From: Phallusia mammillata
Taxonomy: Eukaryota
Direction: 5' to 3'
NCBI GenBank assembly: GCA_965637545.1
Contig: OZ281499.1
Location: 9,982,001 to 10,046,000 of the forward strand
Length of the DNA: 64,000 bases
The notes under the pieces were generated by a model. It saw nothing but the letters and a program-made list of their open reading frames with translations, made no database searches and was not told the DNA's origin. How positions within the stretch are numbered: the first letter of the stretch is position 1; every line of letters begins with the position of its first letter. Position numbers and translations under genes: made by a program. Positions 13,581 to 61,011 of this stretch are shown here, piece by piece.

Positions 13581-16500
13581 CCAGAAAAAGTATTCAAACT
13601 TCCGTTCCGACTCGAGTCATTTTCAAACCGGATGAGCGACAGGAATTGATCGAAAATTGTCAGCGAGCTCATGGTGAGATTGATGAGCTGAGGGACAGAT
13701 TGGAACGTATGGCGGATGATTATAAGTTGAAGATGAAAACAGCGGTTGATCAGGAAAAACACAAATCGGTGCGAAATATATTTTGGCTCATAAGCTTCGG
13801 TTAAGCTAAAAAAATTACTCGTACTAATAATAACAGTTTGTTAAGTTAGACTTTATGGCGGATTTTAAAATAGAGGGATGTTTATATAAGCTGTTGCTGC
13901 TATCAAAATTATAGAGCTCTTCTGGCAATGGTATTTTGTACCGACATTTTGACGTCCTATACAGGTCGCCTTCATCAGGGTAAATTACACTTAATGCACA
14001 CATTTTATATACAAGTCCTGTATATAAAATACAATTGCCAGAAGAGCTCTATAAAAAGAGGGTTGTTTATTTAATTAATTGTCGTTTGAAAGTTCCAATT
14101 ACTTGCTAAAATTTCTCAACCTCTAAACGTTTTACATGTATAAAGCATTGTTATTTGATTATACGCCTCAACCAATTTATAAAAACTTTATGTGACAACA
14201 GCCAACTTGTATTACTGTATAAGTGCAAAACTTTCTTAAAAAAGGGAAAAGTTCAGCCATCAACTTTAATTTCAGCCACGAATGTTGGGAAGAAAAAATG
14301 AAATGGAGAAACGACATTTAAAGCTTCATGTAAAGCCAAAAAACGCACCAAACCACCTTAAAAATTAAATTTCACCCCTGCGGGTCGTTCGCCTAACCTT
14401 ACCAACCATTTGGTAACAAGTAACATTTTTATTATAACTTATTAATACAACAGTTGTATGACCTGTTAAGGAATGGTTCGTTTACCTCGCAGCTTAAATT
14501 ATCTGGTAACTTTTTTGCCATTTACTGTACAACTTTTAATTCAAATGGACAGGTATTGGACAAGATGAAAAACGAAGAGGAACTACAAAACCTATGCTTT
14601 GCAGTTTGCGACGAAACGATGAGAGTACAGAAGGAAATGAGAAAGTTTAACGAAAGTTTAAGCGAAGAACTGGGGATGATTATTGGGCTGAAAGGTTAAC
14701 ACTTTGTTTAGTTTTATGCGACTCAAGTGTATATAAACAGGTATGACACATATGGCCGATTATGGCTCAAGCATTTTCGGAAAGTCGGACTGGGCTTTTT
14801 GGGTCGGTATCGGGTTTCAGTTTTCATTAAACGAGCCTGACTTCAAATTAAACCAGATTTGTGTCGTAGATTTGCCTTAGAATGTCGTAGACTTACGTTG
14901 GAATCTCACTTAATTCGCCTAATTCGGACTTTGTTTTAACAAAATTTTGGGTTTGGGCCCCAATATCAGGCCCGCTTACAATTATGTTTTAAACAAAAAA
15001 AGCGTGTCGCTTTGTATCTCTATTTGGGCCGTTTTTTTTTCTGTAAACTTGATTTTATATGTAACCGGTTCGTAGATATATTTCACCGAATGTTGACACA
15101 ATTTTATCATTATTTTCACATAAATGTTTTACCCACATCTACAAGTGCAAATAGAAGTCTTTTACGAAAGATTGGTCAGCACATTTAAACAGGATTCCAT
15201 AATTTTAAATGCTCTCCCAGTTGTTTTGTCTTGTCACTTTTAACAAGTTTAATTTCTTTTTTGTGTAGGAAAGTTGTTTGAAGAGTCGAGTGGGGACAGA
15301 AAACGGAAAACCACAGGACTAATGACAATGCAAGCTTCAGGCTTTGACGGGATCGGCGCTACCCAAACACAACCGCAACCCAAACATGGCGGAACTATGC
15401 AAGGCATAATGGGTGGCGGGGCGCCTCCAGGTGGCCAAGGTGGTGTGGCAGATATGATGGCTATGATGGACGGAGGCATGCAAGGCGGCATGGGTGGTTT
15501 TGGAGCCCAGGGCATGTCTTTTGCTGGTGGCAATGAGCCAACCAGTGATGAAAATTCTGAAGACTTACAGCAGGAGATAGTCAAGCCCGCTGATGGGAAT
15601 TACTGGAAGTCGTTAAGAACCGCTGTGGTGGGAAAAGATGCAGCTTCTCCAAAACCAAAACCTGAAAAGCGTAATTCTTTAGCGGCTAAAGTGTTAGCTG
15701 AAAAGCAGCGACGAGCCAGTATGGCTGTGCCAAGAGAGCCGGATTCAGTGCCTCATTTTAGCAGCGGCTACAGCGCAGACTTTGAGTCGATAAGCGAATG
15801 TGACGATCCCTGTCTTATTGTACCTTCTTCCGGAATTAACCAGGATGACACTTCATCCGTTGTTACCATACGCCTTGAAACTCCTCCAACTGACACTGAT
15901 ACCGCCAACATAGCACCCCAAGTGGGTATTGTTGTGACCAATGCTACTGATTCAGAGGCTCAGCAAGGAGGAGATGAAAATACAGACGAAAATGCTCCGA
16001 AGATGTTGTCTGTCGTTGACCGAAGGATGGCCAGGTTAGGTCAACGTAGAAGGTCGTCTATGATCCCCTTGCAAGATGTACTTCAGATTGCACGAAGATC
16101 GAGCATTCGAGCACCACCTCGTCCAAAGGTCGTAAAATTTCGTGGTTTCTTCCCCGAGTTCGGAGATGGAAAATCAGCCCTTGACAAAAAGAGAGACGCT
16201 CTCTCCCGCGAGGCGGCTGTGCGGAGAAGAAAAGCAAAGTTGGAAGAAGAGGAAGCGCAAAGAAAGAAGGCTAGAAAAAATGCTTTAGCTGCTGCAACAG
16301 GAATAGATGATGATCCACTGAAACAAGCAGAAGTATTTGTCAGAAATATTTCAACAAAGGTTCATCTTTTTTTGTTTGAAAGATTTGACCAAAAGTTATC
16401 GCGGCAATCTCATTTATTAATGTAGTGTATGTTGGGACAAATGTTTTAATATTACTTTTAACAACAAACCCAATCTCGATAACACGGTGCCATTTCTTAT

Positions 16501-40258: not shown

Positions 40259-41390
40259 ATGACTAAAATACTTGCGATTTTGCTGATTTCATCAGTCATG
40301 TTGATGCGTGCGTCATTGGTCTATGCCCAGTTTCCAAACTCGGATGCAGAGTAAGAAACTCAGTTTGTTTTCTTTAAACATTTTATGTAATTTGGAACAC
40401 TATATACGGATCTGTTCATAAGTTTAATGGTGAAAATAACGGCCCAAATAGACGTAAAAAGCGACATGCTTTATTGTTCAAACGTTTCGGCAAATGCTCA
40501 TGCCATCATCAGTGATATATTTTTACGTCTATTTGGGCCGTTATTTTCACCATTAAATTTTATGTAATGATACGTCAGTGAAATCCAACGTGTGTCGTAA
40601 TTGTGTACCTAGCTAGCATTTACTTAACATCAGTGGTCGGCAACCACCGGTCCGCGGCCCGGTGCTGGTCCGTGAGAAGTTTGTTACCGGGCCGTAAAAA
40701 CTTGCTCAAGGTTCACATTGATCAAAGTTGTAATAACTGTAATTAGTTTTCAGTGTTGAACATTTGTGGTTTCAAATCGGTCCGTAGTGTAAAACAGGTT
40801 GCCGACCCCTGCTTTACATTGTATAGTCCTTGTTTGTATTGGTTACGAGAAATTAAACACAGAATTGTTTTATCACCGGTCCTAACGAAGCTACAACGGT
40901 TTCCACTAAAGCAGCGGTTCCCAAACTGGGGTCCGCGGTCCTTTAGGGGTCCGTGAGGCAATTTTGGGGGGACCGCGAAGCGGTTGAAGTAATTCTATAA
41001 TCTTATTTGGCGTCAGTTTGTGCCACTAAATAAGTTTAAATCAAAGTAGAATTGAGAATCGATTGTCTCCATTGCTAAACAATGGCCTTTATTGAATGAC
41101 AACTAGCAAAAATGCAATTGTTCGCGTTTGTCCTGTTAATGTTTTTGTCCTGTTTGTGATGTCGTATGCTGTCTTTGGATGATTGTTATGCGCAATTTTG
41201 CATAACTAGCTGAAATCCTGCAATCAACTTTCGTTTTTATGAAATACACATTTAGGCTTAACGACCGCGAGCCCTCGAAATAATGGCAAAGGGACCGTTT
41301 TGAAAAAAATATGAAAAAGTTTGGGAACCACTGCACTAAAGGGTCCTCTGTTTTACATCGCTTTCCGCATAGAAAATAAATGAAATAGTG
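40259..41390 (+). CDS. Peptide family locus E1; putative exon 2 interrupted by a MITE
   Basis: Exon1 40259..40350 MTKILAILLISSVMLMRASLVYAQFPNSDA (phase 2). Exon2 from 40827 reads PCLYWLREIKHRIVLSPVLTKLQRFPLK, then MITE 40912-41333; the original frame resumes GPLFYIAFRIENK*. Confidence 0.5.
40392..40557. mobile_element. Penelope-like palindromic insertion with an intact minimal hammerhead motif (40478-40515, minus)
   Basis: 37-bp perfect inverted arms (40423-40459 / 40521-40557); 11-bp TSD ttttatgtaat; absent from the paralog at about 57870. Minus strand reads tca-CTGATGA-t-GGCA(8 nt)TGCC-GAAAC-GTT-tga. Confidence 0.75.
40631..40811. mobile_element. hAT-type MITE
   Basis: TIRs cagtggtcggcaacc / ggttgccgacccctg; TSD cttaacat/ctttacat; absent from the paralog. 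Confidence 0.85.
40912..41333. mobile_element. hAT-type MITE (family also at 60586 and 47619)
   Basis: TIRs cagcggttcccaaac / tttgggaaccactg; perfect 8-bp TSD cactaaag. Confidence 0.92.
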
Positions 41391-45521: not shown

Positions 45522-45654
45522 CAGAAGCAAGTACTATCGAGTGTGTTTTAATGTAAAATAAGAACAATGTTTAAACAATGGGGACATAGGCGAACATAGG
45601 ATACTGTCACAATGCAACAACTTTTTGACATTGCTTGCAGAAATAAACAATAAT

Positions 45655-46074
45655 ATGAATAAACTTGTTGCATTGTTGTTGCTGTCAGCGTTGCTGGTCA
45701 ATGTTACATCTGGTAAAAGATTAGTCCATCGATATGGTTTTGCAACCAGCATCAATGGCGGGTAAGACGTAAAGTTATCTGATTCGTTTAGTTGCATATT
45801 AAATATGTTCACTTTTTAGTGTCTCAGTTGCGTACGACTCCCGAAACAGGTTTGAAACAACTGCCTTGGAGCATGCCCTGGAAAATATGTTCGATGCTGG
45901 TATGAAAAAAAAAATAATTCTAAAACTATATTTTTCAGTTAAATTGTTCCATGACCTATATGTGCCTGTGTGAAATACGGAAACTGTTTGTATTCATTAC
46001 CTTGAATACAAATGTACATAAGGCTACAATTAACCAATTATTTTTGTTTTTCAGAACTACATGAAAGAGTCTAA
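45655..46074 (+). CDS. Secreted peptide precursor A1 (68 aa)
   Basis: join(45655..45761,45820..45899,46055..46074): MNKLVALLLLSALLVNVTSGKRLVHRYGFATSINGGVSVAYDSRNRFETTALEHALENMFDAELHERV*. Splice sites and frame are conserved in three copies. Confidence 0.85.
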
Positions 46075-49704: not shown

Positions 49705-50498
49705 CTAAAAAAATATTCAAACCATTAAATTAAAAAAATCTGGTTAAAATTATTACAGCGGGTGTCGCATCGAGAATTTAAGGTCTGATACAAATGCTTC
49801 CGTCAATAGATTTGGGTTTGGGACTCAAGTTCACAATCACAATAAAAAGTTACGTGGAAGAGTTGTCTCTGTATGTGTTTGCAGCATTTTGTCGACACTT
49901 GCTTTTTCTTCCAAGGGTGCAATATAGGCCAAGTTTGAAGAAATATCTTAGACAGCCGCATGCGACATGCCGGTCACACTTTGTGTAGGGTGCTGCGTCT
50001 CACAACTCCTTGTTGTAGATCAATGATTATTTGACAACACCCACATCGTAGTATAAATCATTTCATTCGTGCTATAGTTTATTTAGTATTTCGTAACTGT
50101 TATTGTTTGGCCGGTTGGGTATTAACTTCCGCAAGTATATGGGGTATTTTTTGGAAAGTAGATCCTCTTTCTGATAAGTTTTAGTGTTTGCTGCCCTGGT
50201 CGTATAAACAAAAGCACAATTATGATAACTGGGCCATACGGTTGGCAGTCAGTATTTGAGTATAGGTTAAGTCATCACTTCGTTCAGTAAGCATTGGTAC
50301 GAAGTATTGGAACAGTAAAGCTGTAGAACAAAATAAAATGAAATTTTTGGAAGTTTTGGGTTAGATGTCTAAATAATAATCAATAAAACAGAAGCAAGTA
50401 CTATCGAATGGGTTTTAATGTAAAATAAGAACAATGTTTAAAAAATGGGGACATGGGCGTACAGGATACTGTGACAATTCAACAACTTTTTGAAATTG

Positions 50499-51019
50499 TT
50501 TAATCATAAACATTACTGCCAAGGTAGTGGTGTATATAGAATACATCGTGTAGACGTTTCGACAATCTCTGTTGTCATCATCAGTACATGTTTTCAATCA
50601 AGCTGTGGAACAGAGATTTTGGACGCAAACCAAAACCGCGTGAGACTGTTGTTTCTCGAATCGCTTTTTACTCAAAGGCATGAACCCGAGCTCAACATCG
50701 ACACAGTTTCCATGCCCTTGCGTCTGTTCAACACCTGACCCATATCTCCGGTTCTTATCTTTTCGTCTACGCCACCGTTCTAAACGTCGTTCCCTGTTAT
50801 CGTCTGTGACGTCACTTCACACATCTGCCTTCCCTTTCTTTTCTTTTTTTTTCCTTAGTGCTTTATATACCGTGTTCCACAGCTTGATTGAAAACATGTA
50901 CTGATGATGACAACAGAGATTGTCGAAACGTCTACACGATGTATTCTATATACACCACTACCTTGGCAGTAATGTTTATGATTAAACTACTTTTCAAGTC
51001 CGTGCATAGTGTTCCTAAG
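50499..51019. mobile_element. Penelope-like foldback insertion: 114-bp perfect inverted repeats, each with a minimal hammerhead motif
   Basis: Arms 50499-50612 and 50873-50986; 12-bp TSD tttttgaaattg (50487-50498, 51020-51031); empty site in paralog A3 at about 59495. Confidence 0.88.
50897..50936 (+). ncRNA. Minimal type I hammerhead ribozyme motif (mirror copy at 50549-50588, minus)
   Basis: tgta-CTGATGA-t-GACAA(cagaga)TTGTC-GAAAC-GTC-taca: intact core, 5-bp helix II, loopless palindromic helix III (ACGU), 4-bp helix I, GUC cleavage triplet. Confidence 0.7.
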
Positions 51020-51052
51020 TTTTTGAAATTGCTTGCAGAAATAAACAATAAC

Positions 51053-51486
51053 ATGAATAAACTTGTTGCATTGTTGTTGCTATCCGCGTTTCTGGTCAAT
51101 GTTGCATCTGGAAAAAGATTAGTTCATCGATATGGTCTTGCAACCAGCATCAATGGCGGGTAAGACCAAAAAGCTGAAAGTTTTCCCGAATCGTTTAGTT
51201 GCGTTTGAAAAATGTTTACTTTTTTATCTTAGTATCTCAATTGGCTACGACGCCCAAAACAGGTTCGAAGCAACTGCCTTGGAGCATGTCCTGGAAGATA
51301 TGTTCGATGCTGGTATTAAAAAAATTAAACAAATAAATCCTAAAAGTATATTTTTCAGTTACATTTTTCCTTGACCCATATGTGACTTTGTCAAATACGA
51401 GGACAATTTGTATTCTTTACCCTGGCTACAAATGCACAGTACAATTAACACGATTTTTTTTTTCAGAACTACATGAAAGAGTCTAA
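51053..51486 (+). CDS. Secreted peptide precursor A2 (68 aa)
   Basis: join(51053..51159,51233..51312,51467..51486): MNKLVALLLLSAFLVNVASGKRLVHRYGLATSINGGISIGYDAQNRFEATALEHVLEDMFDAELHERV*. Confidence 0.85.
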
Positions 51487-53052
51487 GATTAGAAAGATGA
51501 AAACCTCAGTGTTTGTCTGAAAGAAATAATAAATTTGCTATTATTTCGCACTCTTATAATTATAGTAATAAATAGACAAACAAAACGGTTTTGTGAGATT
51601 GTTTTGTCGTTTACATTACTTCAAAACTATTATATTAGATTAAAATGTAACAAGAATCTAACATAGACAAATGTAGATCATTTTAAGTATAGGCTATACT
51701 GACATGTCGACCTTTGAGTATTAGTTGAGTTTTTTTTCGTTTGGTGATAGACAATATAGCGACACGTTGACATTGTTTTAGCAGGATATATTTTAAAATG
51801 TCCGAATAGGTTACAAAAAATTCATTTACTAGTGGGTATTGAAATAGCATGTATCCAGACTTTCATGTTTCACGAATATACTTCATAATGCCACTCACGC
51901 AAAATCAATATAAAAACTTTGATAACTTATCTGCCCTATATTTTTCTATGAATTACTTAAACGTCAGCTTTTCAATGGTGTGGCAGCAAGTTGGGAAGCC
52001 AGTATGGAAAAAATGTACACCCTGACTGTGCCACGTCAATATATTTAAATACATGTTTGAATAATTTATGCTATAAGTTGTTTAAATAATTCCGTTTCAA
52101 CTTCAAGTACGAACCCAGAACCCAAACTTTTTCGGCGGATTCAAAGTAAGGGTAAAGGGTTAACTCGGACAACAAGTTTAACCAAGATATTTTGCTTTGG
52201 ACTCGTGTCTAGTTGTTAAAGCGAGTCTTTCTAAGAATTAACTGACCTAAACTCGTTTGATAAGAATTACAGTTTCAGCTTTTGTAGGCATAAAATTCAT
52301 ATTAAAACAACATTCAAACCATGAAGAGCAAGAGCATGTCCAAACATTGATTTTTGTCAAAACAAATTCAGCAGTTAAAGGGTTAACCACCTTAACTTTC
52401 GAACAAATTTTGAATTAAAGTAATGCAGGTGGTAGTACTCAAAGATATGAGCTACACCTTAAGTTTAAGTAAGTAAAAGTACTTTTCACAGGATCTGTCC
52501 CTCTAATAGTAGGCATGTTAATGTCCACTATCACTGAGTCAAACGTTTTCAGTAATTGATGATAAAGAATACAGGTATCGACGAAATAAATATTTCGATT
52601 GTTACAACTTCGTGTAAGGTGATTTTATGTCAGACGCATTTGCTTCCTTATTATCCCCTTAAGTTTAGCTCCTTTGAATAACACTATAGTGCCGTCCCTA
52701 GCACATGCCCAAGTACCCGACTGTCTAAAGTTGCAGAAATGCCTATAAAATGCACTATAAAAGCCGATTTTTAAAATTGCTCAGCAGGTTTTTGGCGAAA
52801 TATAATATAATTAAAATATATGATTGGTTTGTTTAATTCCATTTTGAACCTAAATTAGCGACTATACCGACCAAAAAACAAACAAACAAACAAATGGGAA
52901 TGAATTCGGCCAAATTTAACACACATTGCAACATTGTTTCATTAATCTTTTATTTGCTGAACCGATAATTTTGCTGTTGCATATCAAAACAAACTATATG
53001 CGTTAACATAATCAACGATTTCGTTTTCTTCAACAAACTATAGGAGGAGCTT

Positions 53053-55148: not shown

Positions 55149-55221
55149 ACCTGTGTAGCTCAGTTGGTAAAGCGCGACTCACGGCAAAACTCCTGGCGTG
55201 GGTTCAAGACCCACCGCAGGC
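55149..55221 (+). pseudogene. tRNA-like module, second copy
   Basis: 73 nt; 6/7 acceptor pairs, D-stem GCT/AGC, perfect T-arm, unpaired anticodon stem. Confidence 0.6.
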
Positions 55222-55857
55222 TATCTTGCCATGTGGCAATGACTGGTCACCGGCTGATTCGGTATGATGCCTTCAATGGGCCTGGCGTACTATGGTTTCT
55301 CGGTAGAGCATTTCATTTAGGCCGAAGTTTCACCAACTATAATTCGGGCTCTGTTTTAAACAAATGTAGTTCGGGCTCGGTTTTAGTCCTGTACTTTTTG
55401 GTTCCGGTTAACTTTGAGTTCAAATTTCGAAACCGCTCACAACACTGGTTACGTCACTCTACAACTCGTTCATAGAAACAATCATTTGGCAACCAGAGTT
55501 AAACAATATATATCCTTATCAAAGTTGAAATACGATAAATACAAATACATACAGTAACAGATGAGGAATGAGTGGAGCATGTGTGGAAAACAAAACATAC
55601 CGAAGAGTACAATAGGTTACATGTTTACTGAAAGCAACTTCTTGTAATTCTTTAATGTTAATCTATATGCACTTCAAAAGCCTGTTAAATTCAATTTTGA
55701 AATATTCGGAGAGGTATTATTTTGTATTTCTCATCTGACCACATTTTTCAAGAAACTTGTTTTGCAATCTTCTGCATTCCTTTCAGATCTGTTTGTTTCC
55801 GTGAAACCCAGATGGTAAAAAATTGGTCAAATATACTCAATGTTACATGGTGTTTGA

Positions 55858-58680: not shown

Positions 58681-59526
58681 TTAACGATGCAAACAAAAGC
58701 TGCCTGGATGTTGAAAGAGCAAGGAAATATTTTTTGTCTTTGGTGGCTTTTGTTTTGCTGTGTGACTGAAATATAAATAATAAATCAAAATTAAATAAAT
58801 AACACGGTTAAAGTTTACAATCACAATAAAAAGTTACATGGAATATAATTGTCTCTGTATGTGTTTGCAGCATTTTGTCGACACTTGCTTTATAATTCCA
58901 AGGGTGTATAGGCCAAGTTTGAAGAAATATCTTAGACAGCCGCATTCGACATGCCGGTCACACTTTGTTAAGGGTGCTGCGTCTCACAACTCCTTGTTTG
59001 TAGATCAATGATTATATAACAACACCCACATCGTAGCACTAACCATTTCATTCGTGCTATAGTTTATTTAGTATTTCGTAACTGTTATTGTTTGGCCGGT
59101 TGTGTATTAACTTCCGCAAGTATATGGGGTATTTGTTGGAAAGTAGATCCTCTTTCTGATAAGTTTTAGTGTTTGCTGCCCTGGTCGTATAAACAAAAGC
59201 ACAATTATGATAACTGGGCCATACGGTTGGCAGTCAGTATTTGAGTATAGGTTAAGCCACCACGTTGTTGAGCATTGGTATGAAGTATTGGAAAAAAGCA
59301 TTGGTATGAAGTATTGGAATAGTAAAGCTGTAGAACAAAATAAAATGAAATTTTTGGAAGTTTTGGGTTAGATGTCTAAATAAAACTCTATAAAACAGAA
59401 GCAAGTACTATCGAATGGGTTTTAATGTAAAATAAGAACAATGTTTAAAAAATGGGGACATGGGCGTACAGGATACTGTGACAATACAACAACTTTTTGA
59501 AATTGCTTGCAGAAATAAACAATAAC

Positions 59527-59941
59527 ATGAATAAACTTGTTGCATTGTTGTTGCTATCCGCGTTTCTGGTCAATGTTGCATCTGGTAAAAGATTAGTTAA
59601 TCGATATGGTCTTGCAACCAGCATCAATGGCGGGTAAGACTGAAAGTTATCTGATTCGTTTAGTTGCATATTAAAAATGTTCACTTTTTAGTGTCTCAAT
59701 TGGCTACGACGCGCGAAACAGGTTTGAAACAACTGCCTTGGAGCATGCCCTGGAAGATATGTTTGATGCTGGTATGAAAAAAATTAAACAAAAAAATCGT
59801 AAAACTATAGTTTTCAGTTAAATTTTTCCGTGACCCATATGTGCATGTGTCAAATACGAGGACAAAATTATTTACCCTGGCTACAAATGTACAGTACAAT
59901 TAACACGCTTTTTGTTTTCAGAACTACATGAAAGAGTCTAA
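59527..59941 (+). CDS. Secreted peptide precursor A3 (68 aa)
   Basis: join(59527..59633,59692..59771,59922..59941): MNKLVALLLLSAFLVNVASGKRLVNRYGLATSINGGVSIGYDARNRFETTALEHALEDMFDAELHERV*. Confidence 0.85.
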
Positions 59942-60585: not shown

Positions 60586-61011
60586 CAGCGGTTCCCAAAC
60601 TGGGGTCCGCGGTCCTTTAGGGGTCCGTGAGGCAATTTTTGGGGGACCGCGAAGCGGTTGAAGTAATTCTATAATCTTATTTGGCGTCAGTTTGTGCCAC
60701 TAAATAAGTTTAAATCAAAGTAGAATTGAGAATCGACTGTCTCCATTGCTAAACAATGGCCTTTATTGAATGACAACTATCAAAAATGCAATTGTTCGCG
60801 CACAATCGTAATGTTTTTGTCCTGTTTGTGATGTCATATGCTGTCTTTGGATGATTGTTATGCGCAATTTTGCATAACTAGCTAAAATCCTGCAATCAAC
60901 TTTCGTTTTTATGAAATACACATTTAGGCTTAACGACCGCGAGCCTTCGAAATAATGGCAAAGGGACCGTTTTGAAAAAAATATGAAAAAAGTTTTTTTT
61001 GGGAACCACTG
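60586..61011. mobile_element. hAT-type MITE, nearly identical to 40912-41333
   Basis: Same TIRs; perfect TSD ttttagta. Confidence 0.92.

What the first reader, a model, noticed from the sequence alone, without database searches (positions are those of the whole stretch)
50499..51053. Double-hammerhead foldback element inserted 33 bp upstream of the A2 start codon
Seen: a 521-bp insertion with a 12-bp TSD, absent in A1/A3, made of 114-bp perfect inverted arms. Each arm has an intact minimal hammerhead motif, and the sense copy would cleave after GUC at 50932, about 120 nt before the ATG. It lies between the position of the candidate TATA (here mutated) and the ATG, so it may be in the 5-prime UTR. 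Established: Penelope-like elements carry minimal type I hammerheads with a loopless palindromic helix III that self-cleave as dimers. Inference: A2 mRNA could be decapped by self-cleavage or form long dsRNA, giving paralog-specific silencing. Perfect arm identity implies recent insertion or gene conversion.
Basis: partly seen in the sequence, partly recalled or inferred. Interest (0 to 1): 0.75.

Follow-up and report, generated by a model that had tools for sequence, protein, structure and literature searches.

The report
Truncated Penelope retrotransposon upstream of gene
The 521-bp "foldback" is real, but it is the ordinary head-to-head scar of a Penelope-like retrotransposon; the insert is still absent from some individuals, and the neighbouring secreted-peptide gene A2 is still transcribed and spliced, so the proposed silencing is not supported.

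Summary
Window 50499-51019 is a 521-bp insert with a 12-bp target duplication. It is absent from paralogs A1 and A3 and has perfect 114-nt inverted arms, each carrying a minimal hammerhead (HHR) motif.

It is not a separate "double-hammerhead element". It is a composite insertion of a canonical Penelope-like element (PLE). A 406-bp 5'-truncated copy holds the last 40 codons of the RT/GIY-YIG ORF, the 3' region with TATA and HHR, and a 32-nt tail. A 114-nt inverted partial copy is joined to it head-to-head. Ten other copies in this genome have the same build, with other arm lengths and target duplications.

The two HHRs lie on opposite strands, so any one transcript carries only one.

A DNA contig from another individual carries the exact empty A2 site, so the insertion is polymorphic and recent. 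A spliced A2 RNA contig runs into the insert's tail. No RNA contig covers the insert's interior. A template-switch tag puts a family RNA 5' end about 25 nt after the insert's TATA. I infer (about 0.5) that the PLE promoter now drives this A2 allele. Silencing is unsupported.

This scan had already identified such foldbacks elsewhere in this genome as PLE ends. This is a known kind, of modest interest.

The parts
50487..50498 (.). Left copy of the 12-bp target-site duplication, TTTTTGAAATTG
   Evidence: A1 and A3 have a single copy at the empty site.
50499..50612 (-). Inverted 114-nt partial PLE copy. It is the reverse complement of 50873-50986, ends tail-less at ...GATTAAA, and carries the hammerhead motif on the - strand (core complement at 50578-50584). 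It does not include the TATA.
50613..51018 (+). 5'-truncated sense copy of the PLE (406 nt): ORF end, 3' region (pLTR-like), and tail
   Evidence: 96-98% identical to the 3' ends of RT/GIY-YIG elements elsewhere in the genome.
50616..50738 (+). Remnant of the PLE ORF: last 40 codons plus stop (ILDANQNRV...PLRLFNT*)
   Evidence: Translation. 38/40 identical to the C-terminus of the 707-aa RT/GIY-YIG ORF in L031.
50807..50814 (+). CRE-like palindrome TGACGTCA within an invariant block
   Evidence: Invariant in 7 copies from subfamilies 86-100% identical. Its function is inferred.
50862..50869 (+). TATA box (TTTATATA) of the PLE 3' region
   Evidence: The 19-nt block CTTAGTGCTTTATATACCG is invariant across subfamilies. 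An RNA 5' end lies about 22-27 nt downstream.
50890..50891 (+). Inferred transcription start of the PLE family RNA, and possibly of the A2 insertion allele
   Evidence: An X7 contig carries a template-switch-oligo remnant joined at left-arm position 50594, which mirrors to 50891 (table 7). This is family-level evidence, not specific to this locus.
50897..50936 (+). Minimal type I hammerhead motif. Helix I is UGUA/UACA (50897-50900 / 50933-50936). The core CUGAUGA is at 50901-50907, followed by an extra U at 50908. Helix II is GACAA/UUGUC (50909-50913 / 50920-50924). GAAA is at 50925-50928, inside the ACGU palindrome 50928-50931. The predicted cut is after C50932.
50987..51018 (+). 32-nt PLE 'tail' (TACTTTTCAAGTCCGTGCATAGTGTTCCTAA), present at this end only. 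An extra G follows at 51019.
   Evidence: One tail-bearing and one tail-less end were seen in 10 of 10 other composites read clearly. Matches Craig 2021 and Frangieh 2024.
51020..51031 (.). Right copy of the target-site duplication
51053..51159 (+). A2 exon 1 coding part (ATG at 51053). The mRNA 5' UTR runs upstream at least to 50986.
   Evidence: X7 record 26 and X6 record 20. Intron 1 is 51160-51232, GT..AG.
51233..51312 (+). A2 exon 2
   Evidence: Spliced RNA contigs in X6 and X7. Intron 2 is 51313-51466.
51467..51573 (+). A2 exon 3, up to the end of RNA contig coverage
   Evidence: X6 record 22.

Best explanation
The feature is one recent, still polymorphic insertion of a canonical endonuclease-bearing Penelope-like retrotransposon (PLE).

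How it formed (inferred from the anatomy and from published PLE biochemistry). The element's GIY-YIG nuclease cut both strands of an AT-rich target 33 bp before the A2 start codon, staggered by 12 bp. Both DNA ends primed reverse transcription of the 3' part of PLE RNA. One cDNA started at the outer start site, so it carries the 32-nt tail; it reached 406 nt, into the last 40 codons of the ORF. The other started at the inner start site, so it is tail-less; it reached 114 nt. The two cDNAs were joined head-to-head. This gives perfect inverted arms, each with the element's minimal hammerhead, on opposite strands.

Effect on the gene (partly shown, partly inferred). The longer copy carries the element's own TATA promoter (50862-50869) pointing at A2. 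Family RNAs start about 25 nt after that TATA. A2 mRNA from the insertion allele is made and spliced, and its leader runs into the insert. So the most likely state is a chimeric A2 transcript that starts in the PLE at about 50891, carries a single weak hammerhead in its first ~45 nt, and is mostly not cleaved. It is not a silenced gene.
For: PLE identity:
- The ORF remnant is 38/40 identical to that ORF's C-terminus.
- The nearest Atlas clusters are HTH_animal/RVT_1/(GIY-YIG) proteins.

Composite form:
- Other small copies have inverted arms of 58, 66, 119, 141, 147 and 191 nt.
- Each of the ten other composites has its own 7-14 bp target duplication. The ten read clearly have exactly one tail-bearing and one tail-less end.
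- Literature: an adjacent inverted 5'-truncated copy and a 30-40 bp tail at one end are typical of PLEs (PMC8557442). A PLE protein cleaves and extends both strands, and the tail is the stretch between two RT start sites (PMC11167929).

Hammerhead:
- 2545 motif hits against 1 control hit.
- Several sequence families keep the core while helix II (4-8 bp) and helix I change in a complementary way. Real helices average 4.7 and 2.7 bp, against 1.8 and 1.0 in shuffles.
- One helix I pair changes U-A to C-G between subfamilies, with a U-G intermediate.

Polymorphism: X4 contig record 11 joins 50486 to 51020, with one mismatch on each side. It also carries the A2-specific CAATAAAA variant, so it is A2 and not A3.

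Expression:
- X7 record 26 (305 nt, 0 mismatches) covers 50986-51158, 51232-51311 and 51466-51517.
- RNA depth is zero over 50404-50487 and 50656-50823 in both RNA runs.
- A template-switch tag sits at the mirror of 50891.
- RNA contigs read out of both ends of another copy (L032) into its flanks.
- The TATA and CRE blocks are invariant across subfamilies.
- In Penelope the pLTR holds the TSS (PMC8557442).
Against: - All run data are assembled contigs, so they show neither true RNA ends nor levels. A contig can merge two transcript populations. The link between a PLE start and the A2 exons in one molecule is therefore not proven.
- The A2-linked contig stops at 50986, where the sequence stops being unique to this locus. 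A start between 50940 and 50986 cannot be excluded.
- The template-switch tag may come from any copy of the family.
- X6's A2 contig starts at 51022. This could mean a native start at the insertion site, or an empty allele in that sample.
- The left junction of the insert was not independently bridged by a listed contig.
- I did not find a full-length tandem copy showing this 3' region upstream of an ORF, so calling it a pLTR rests on analogy plus the RNA evidence.
- The RT was not placed on a tree.
Confidence: 0.85

Rival explanations
1. The hammerhead in the A2 leader cleaves the mRNA after C50932 and removes the cap, and/or the two arms form long dsRNA. Either route would give paralog-specific silencing of A2.
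For: - The core motif is intact, and its helices are supported by covariation.
- If transcription starts at about 50891, the motif lies in the A2 leader.
- The arms would form a very stable hairpin if both were transcribed.
Against: - A spliced A2 mRNA contig from the insertion allele exists.
- RNA contigs span the cut site: X6 record 18 covers 50905-50957, and X7 record 23 mirrors to 50894-50982.
- Only one sense hammerhead lies on any transcript.
- The catalytic fold of the monomer (-4.3 kcal/mol) loses to an alternative fold (-12.3).
- Published minimal PLE hammerheads show no monomer activity and low dimer activity (PMC4209133). One needed the PLE protein, and no reads ended at its cut site in vivo (PMC11167929).
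- No RNA contig covers the insert's interior, so a hairpin transcript is not seen.
Confidence: 0.1
2. The insertion is a neutral passenger. A2 is still driven by its native upstream promoter, and transcription either reads through the 521-bp insert or starts just downstream of it. The PLE promoter plays no part.
For: - X6's A2 contig begins at 51022, at the insertion boundary.
- Contigs cannot prove that PLE-initiated RNA and A2 exons are one molecule.
- Most TE insertions are neutral or mildly harmful.
Against: - Neither RNA run has any contig on the left flank (50404-50487) or the insert interior (50656-50823). A2 exons in the same runs have depth 5.7-14.9.
- X7's contig continues from exon 1 through the duplication and the whole tail with 0 mismatches.
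- A2's upstream CTATAAAA is already degenerate in both the filled and the empty allele.
Confidence: 0.3
3. It is a DNA foldback or MITE-type transposon with 114-bp terminal inverted repeats, or an assembly artefact of a long-read foldback chimera.
For: Perfect inverted arms flanked by a target duplication look like a MITE.
Against: - The interior is the 3' end of an RT/GIY-YIG ORF.
- Arm length differs in every copy, and the ends are asymmetric, with a tail on one side only.
- The right junction appears in an independent RNA run, and the empty site in an independent DNA run. So the insertion is a real allele.
Confidence: 0.02

Closest known systems
Canonical EN+ Penelope-like elements (Penelope/Poseidon type) and their composite tandem/inverted insertions
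   Same: - A single ORF with RT followed by a C-terminal GIY-YIG nuclease with Cys/His motifs.
- Heavy 5' truncation.
- An inverted 5'-truncated copy abutting the 5' end.
- A 30-40 bp tail at one end only.
- Target duplications of variable length at AT-rich sites.
- A hammerhead in the terminal repeat region.
- A TSS in that region (PMC8557442, PMC11167929).
   Different: - This copy is very short (406 + 114 nt) and non-coding.
- In this family the hammerhead lies about 165 nt after the stop codon and about 55 nt before the inner RT start site. In the Anolis element it lies at the pLTR-ORF junction.
- No Zn-finger-like motif was seen by eye in the RT-EN linker, which suggests Penelope/Poseidon rather than Neptune or Nematis. 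No tree was made.
Minimal hammerhead ribozymes of metazoan PLEs (min-HHR; Cervera & de la Pena 2014, PMC4209133)
   Same: - The core CUGAUGA...GAAA...GUC.
- An extra nucleotide between A9 and G10.1.
- A G10.1-C11.1 pair.
- No helix III loop, and palindromic 15.2-16.2 (ACGU).
- A short helix I of 4 bp.
[quoted passage not shown]
   Different: - Helix II is 5 bp here, against 7-8 bp in the Schistosoma families. Other families in this genome do have 7-8 bp.
- Activity was not tested.
- The two copies in the insert are inverted, not tandem, so they cannot dimerise on one transcript.
Non-LTR retrozymes (tandem hammerhead repeats giving circRNAs; PMC7229834; bioRxiv 10.64898/2026.07.22.740005)
   Same: Short, non-autonomous, hammerhead-bearing, and derived from or mobilised by PLEs.
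   Different: - Retrozymes are direct tandem repeats with canonical type I hammerheads, and they yield circular RNA.
- Here there are two inverted copies, an ORF remnant and a minimal hammerhead. Nothing suggests circularisation.
TE-derived alternative promoters (outward-reading promoters of retroelement ends driving host genes)
   Same: An element end carrying a TATA and a TSS faces a host start codon 162 nt away, and the host mRNA leader contains element sequence.
   Different: The one-molecule link is not yet shown. The leader would also contain a ribozyme motif, which is unusual for such chimeras.

Membership tests
Penelope-like element (canonical EN+) | Reverse transcriptase domain in the single ORF | tested here: met
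   RVT_1 hits in three relatives' ORFs, E 1e-10 to 6e-8 and above the gathering score. The window copy itself keeps only the last 40 codons.
Penelope-like element (canonical EN+) | C-terminal GIY-YIG endonuclease | tested here: met
   PF01541 scores 26.7 bits against a cut-off of 22.6, E 6.8e-6, on the last 130 aa of the L031 ORF. The motif VVYRLVCNCGASYIGETRRNLAVRIKEH is seen in the translation.
Penelope-like element (canonical EN+) | 5'-truncated copies with an adjacent inverted 5'-truncated copy (inverted pLTR-like repeats) | tested here: met
   The window insert and ten other composites, with arm lengths from 58 nt to several kb.
Penelope-like element (canonical EN+) | A 30-40 bp tail at only one end of the insertion | tested here: met
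   The 32-nt tail at 50987-51018 is only on the right. The same asymmetry holds in the 10 other composites that could be read clearly.
Penelope-like element (canonical EN+) | RT groups with PLE/telomerase RTs on a tree | not tested
   No phylogeny was made. The only support is feature-based Atlas neighbours with HTH_animal/RVT_1/GIY-YIG.
Minimal PLE hammerhead (min-HHR) | Conserved catalytic core CUGAUGA / GAAA / UH cleavage triplet | tested here: met
   50901-50932 on the + strand, with a mirror copy on the - strand.
Minimal PLE hammerhead (min-HHR) | An extra nucleotide between A9 and G10.1, a G10.1-C11.1 pair, and palindromic 15.2-16.2 without a loop | tested here: met
   U50908; G50909-C50924; ACGU at 50928-50931. 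The criteria come from PMC4209133.
Minimal PLE hammerhead (min-HHR) | Helices I and II supported by compensatory change across families | tested here: met
   23 distinct helix II sequences average 4.7 contiguous bp, against 1.8 when shuffled. Helix I averages 2.7 bp, against 1.0 with random partners. One helix I pair changes U-A to C-G.
Minimal PLE hammerhead (min-HHR) | Self-cleavage (as a dimer or with protein help) | not testable with these tools
   Only thermodynamics could be run. The catalytic monomer fold is -4.3 kcal/mol, against an MFE of -12.3. RNA contigs span the site.
Rfam hammerhead families (Hammerhead_1, _3, HH9, HH10, _II) | Score at or above the gathering threshold | tested here: not met
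   No hammerhead hit even at E up to 10. This is expected, because those models include helix III.
Foldback / MITE DNA transposon | Fixed terminal inverted repeats shared by all copies, symmetric ends, no retroelement interior | tested here: not met
   Variable arms, an asymmetric tail, and an interior that is the end of an RT/EN ORF.
Non-LTR retrozyme | Direct tandem repeats, each with a type I hammerhead | tested here: not met
   The two motifs are inverted.

The most novel reading that the evidence does not exclude
In carriers of this allele, the Penelope-like element's own TATA promoter has become the A2 promoter. A2's ancestral TATA is already degenerate. Every A2 mRNA from this allele would then begin with a minimal hammerhead about 5-45 nt from the cap. 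Because empty and filled alleles both occur in the population, this would be a natural matched pair. It could be used to measure what a PLE minimal hammerhead does to a capped Pol II mRNA in vivo, which remains an open question for these ribozymes.
Probability: 0.4. Interest if true: 0.45.

Novelty: new member of a known kind. Interest (0 to 1): 0.3.

Why it matters
As an object it is ordinary. PLE composite insertions with minimal hammerheads are described in the literature, and this scan has already met them elsewhere in this genome.

What is specific here is the position and the state. The insert is young and polymorphic, 33 bp before the start codon of a small secreted-peptide gene. The gene's mRNA leader extends into the element. 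If the element's promoter does drive A2, the locus gives filled and empty alleles of one gene that differ by a ribozyme-bearing leader. That is a convenient in vivo test of whether minimal PLE hammerheads cleave at all in a host mRNA, and an example of promoter donation by a PLE.

It also shows how regular the rule "one tail-bearing end, one tail-less end" is. That fits the two-start-site, two-strand priming model proposed from in vitro work.

Tried and rejected
- Rfam at gathering thresholds and at E up to 10 over the region found no hammerhead family, only chance snoRNA-like hits. I take this as a limit of the models, not as evidence against the motif.
- The sigma-70/terminator scan is irrelevant for a eukaryote and gave nothing above chance.
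- I looked for a full-length tandem copy of this family to show the 3' region upstream of an ORF. The N-terminal protein search found essentially one locus with a long frame (L031, 748 aa open frame) and many truncated or distant copies. The apparent tandem in L035 is two exact 641-bp duplicates around an N gap. I left the gap untouched and did not use it.
- MITE and assembly-artefact readings were rejected (see rivals).
- SL trans-splicing at the AG at 51038-51039 was considered, because ...TTGCTTGCAG looks like an acceptor. I rejected it as the main route, because the RNA contigs run through that site without a break.
The family of A2 is therefore taken only from an earlier, unchecked note.
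- The organism (sea squirt) also comes only from earlier notes and was not tested here.
A1 and A3 expression could therefore not be compared.

Full report
**Observation**

- The repeat finder reports inverted arms 50493-50612 / 50873-50992 (120 nt, 98%). A base-by-base check shows a perfect run of 114-115 nt.
- Aligning the two flanks with the corresponding promoter regions of paralogs A3 (about 59447-59560) and A1 (about 45575-45690) shows a single, uninterrupted ...CAACAACTTTTTGAAATTGCTTGCAGAAATAAACAATAACATG in both.
- In A2, TTTTTGAAATTG therefore occurs twice (50487-50498 and 51020-51031), around a 521-bp insert (50499-51019).
- The + strand of the right arm carries CUGAUGA-U-GACAA(CAGAGA)UUGUC-GAAA-CG-UC at 50901-50932. 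The left arm carries its mirror image on the - strand.
- The ATG is at 51053, which is 33 nt from the insertion site and 120 nt from the predicted cut after C50932.

**What it is**

A search of the window's own genome (240 Mb) with the insert gave at least 96 matches from 907 candidates.
- Nearly all of them match only insert positions 115-520. The repeated unit is therefore the 406-nt right-hand part, not the foldback.
- In longer copies that unit is the 3' end of an ORF. L031 holds two head-to-head ORFs of 614 and 707 aa, and L032 one of 527 aa. All hit RVT_1.
- The last 130 aa hit the GIY-YIG domain above Pfam's cut-off. The translation shows the typical ...VVYRLVCNCGASYIGETRRNLAVRIKEH....
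- RT followed by a C-terminal GIY-YIG nuclease is the architecture of canonical Penelope-like elements (PLEs). Atlas neighbours agree.
- Window 50616-50738 encodes the last 40 codons plus the stop of that ORF, 38/40 identical.

The insert is thus a 5'-truncated PLE copy (50613-51018) preceded by an inverted copy of 114 nt of its own 3' region.

**The foldback is a by-product of insertion, not an element**

- Other short copies have inverted arms of 58, 66, 119, 141, 147 and 191 nt.
- Larger composites are pairs of 5'-truncated copies joined head-to-head over 1.2-5.5 kb.
- Each of the ten other composites I examined has its own AT-rich target duplication of 7-14 bp. All ten that could be read clearly have one end that carries a 32-nt tail (...TACTTTTCAAGTCCGTGCATAGTGTTCCTAA) and one end that stops at ...GATTAAA. 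The window insert follows the same rule: tail at 50987-51018 on the right, none on the left.
- This matches the published picture. [quoted passage not shown] 2021, PMC8557442).
- A purified PLE protein cleaves and extends both DNA strands and starts reverse transcription at two adjacent internal sites. The stretch between those sites is the tail (Frangieh et al. 2024, PMC11167929).
- I infer that the two arms are two cDNAs made in one event, one from each start site. That also explains why they are identical.
- The junction at 50612/50613 shares at most one base with the full-length sequence.

**The hammerhead**

- Rfam does not score it. Its models require helix III, which this motif lacks.
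- The motif meets every sequence criterion given for minimal PLE hammerheads by Cervera & de la Pena 2014 (PMC4209133): an extra nucleotide after A9, a G10.1-C11.1 pair, palindromic 15.2-16.2, and a short helix I.
- A pattern for it occurs 2545 times in the genome, against once for the reversed control.
- Among the fetched loci there are 23 different helix II sequences from several families. Their helices are internally complementary: mean 4.7 bp against 1.8 in shuffles, and helix I 2.7 bp against 1.0 with random partners.
- Between subfamilies of the present element, one helix I pair changes from U-A to C-G, with a U-G intermediate. Old copies (86-90% identical) show core-killing changes, as expected for decay.
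- The motif is therefore a real, conserved PLE feature.

Two points temper the "double hammerhead" label.
- First, the two copies are on opposite strands. A transcript holds one ribozyme and one antisense copy. They cannot form the tandem dimer that these ribozymes are thought to need. If both were transcribed they would form a 114-bp duplex (MFE -243 kcal/mol, z -27).
- Second, the catalytic fold of the monomer is weak (-4.3 against -12.3 kcal/mol for the best fold). Published minimal hammerheads show no monomer activity and low dimer activity. One needed the PLE protein and left no reads at its cut site in vivo.

**Population and RNA evidence (all runs are assembled contigs)**

- In DNA run X4 (another study), a 748-nt contig joins 50486 directly to 51020, with one mismatch on each side. 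It keeps the A2-specific CAATAAAA at 50381-50388, where A1 and A3 have CTATAAAA. It is therefore the empty A2 allele and not a paralog. It is also the only contig covering the flanks in that run.
- The insertion is therefore polymorphic, which fits the perfect arms.
- In RNA run X7, a 305-nt contig with no mismatch covers 50986-51158, 51232-51311 and 51466-51517. This is spliced A2 mRNA whose leader runs through the duplication and the whole tail. It stops exactly where the sequence becomes shared with other copies.
- X6 gives the same splicing. The introns are 51160-51232 and 51313-51466, both GT..AG.
- Neither RNA run has any contig on the left flank (50404-50487) or on the insert's interior (50656-50823), although A2 exons have depth 5.7-14.9.
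- Family RNA coverage is concentrated on 50853-51015.
- One X7 contig ends, at the mirror of position 50891, in the complement of a template-switch oligo preceded by CCC. That is the signature of an RNA 5' end. It lies 22-27 nt after TATATA (50864-50869).
- That TATA block and a CRE-like TGACGTCA (50807-50814) are invariant in seven copies spanning 86-100% identity.
- RNA contigs also read out of both ends of the L032 composite into its flanks.
- In Penelope the pLTR is known to hold the TSS.

**Reading**

- Shown: the insert is a PLE composite; it is polymorphic; the filled allele is transcribed and spliced; its leader reaches into the insert; and uncleaved RNA spans the cut site in family transcripts.
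- Inferred (about 0.5): the A2 mRNA of this allele starts at the PLE's own promoter near 50891.
- Caveats: contigs can merge separate transcript populations. The 5' tag is at family level, not locus level. X6's A2 contig starts at 51022, which could mark a native start or an empty allele.
- Silencing by self-cleavage or by dsRNA is not supported (about 0.1).

**Comparison and novelty**

This is a new copy of a known kind of element, in a known insertion form, with a known kind of ribozyme. Earlier notes of this scan reached the same identification for other foldbacks in this genome (s1-399063, s1-408610). I re-derived it here independently. The locus-specific points are the polymorphism, the position at a gene start and the chimeric leader.

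**Limits**

- I did not fill the N gap met in L035.
- I built no consensus of the element.
- The host (a sea squirt) and the nature of the A genes come from earlier notes only.

Noticed in passing
window 40380-40568: A second tiny PLE composite from a different hammerhead family (CUGAUGA-U-GGCA...UGCC-GAAAC-GUU on the - strand, about 40475-40512). It has 41-nt inverted arms (40420-40460 / 40520-40560) and a 12-bp target duplication, ATTTTATGTAAT (40380-40391 / 40557-40568). Its left end, GGAACACTAT, is the reverse complement of the tail end ATAGTGTTCC of the 50.5-kb insert, so two PLE families share the tail terminus.
   Followed up: partly
window about 13930-13972, - strand: A decayed hammerhead of the long-helix-II family (CTGATGAAGGCGACCTGTATAGGACGTC, then AAAAT instead of GAAAC).
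   Followed up: no
G000 genome-wide; first 100 listed hits on contig C1: There are 2545 minimal-hammerhead pattern hits against 1 control hit. Among the first 100 listed, nine pairs lie less than 500 bp apart. All nine are in -/+ order (head-to-head) and none in +/- order. Three of the nine look like one segmental repeat with an 18-kb period.
   Followed up: partly
L031, L032, L033, L002-L004, L015, L019, L024: Every composite that could be read has exactly one tail-bearing end (...GTGTTCCTAA) and one tail-less end (...GATTAAA). This regularity fits priming of both target strands from the two alternative RT start sites.
   Followed up: yes
window 50381-50388 against 59388-59395 (A3) and the A1 equivalent: A1 and A3 have CTATAAAA about 115 nt upstream of the insertion site. 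A2 has CAATAAAA in both the filled allele (window) and the empty allele (X4 contig), so this change predates the insertion.
   Followed up: partly
window 55149-55222, + strand: Rfam tRNA hit (33.8 bits against a gathering score of 29), with 19 nt where the model has 17 in the anticodon region. ARAGORN finds no tRNA there. It may be a tRNA-derived repeat or a degenerate gene.
   Followed up: partly
window 40289, 57772 and 57796 (- strand), and repeats 40912-41318 / 60586-60990: Near-identical (98-99%) segments flank the A cluster on both sides, so the A1-A3 array sits inside a larger segmental duplication.
   Followed up: no
L035 3247-3446 (G000:C3, about 16100746-16100945): A run of N flanked by two exact 641-bp duplicates of a PLE end. 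It is probably an assembly join in a PLE composite. It was left as it is.
   Followed up: no
window 51019: A single extra G lies between the end of the tail (...CCTAA) and the target duplication. It is either an untemplated base or a variant of the source copy.
   Followed up: no
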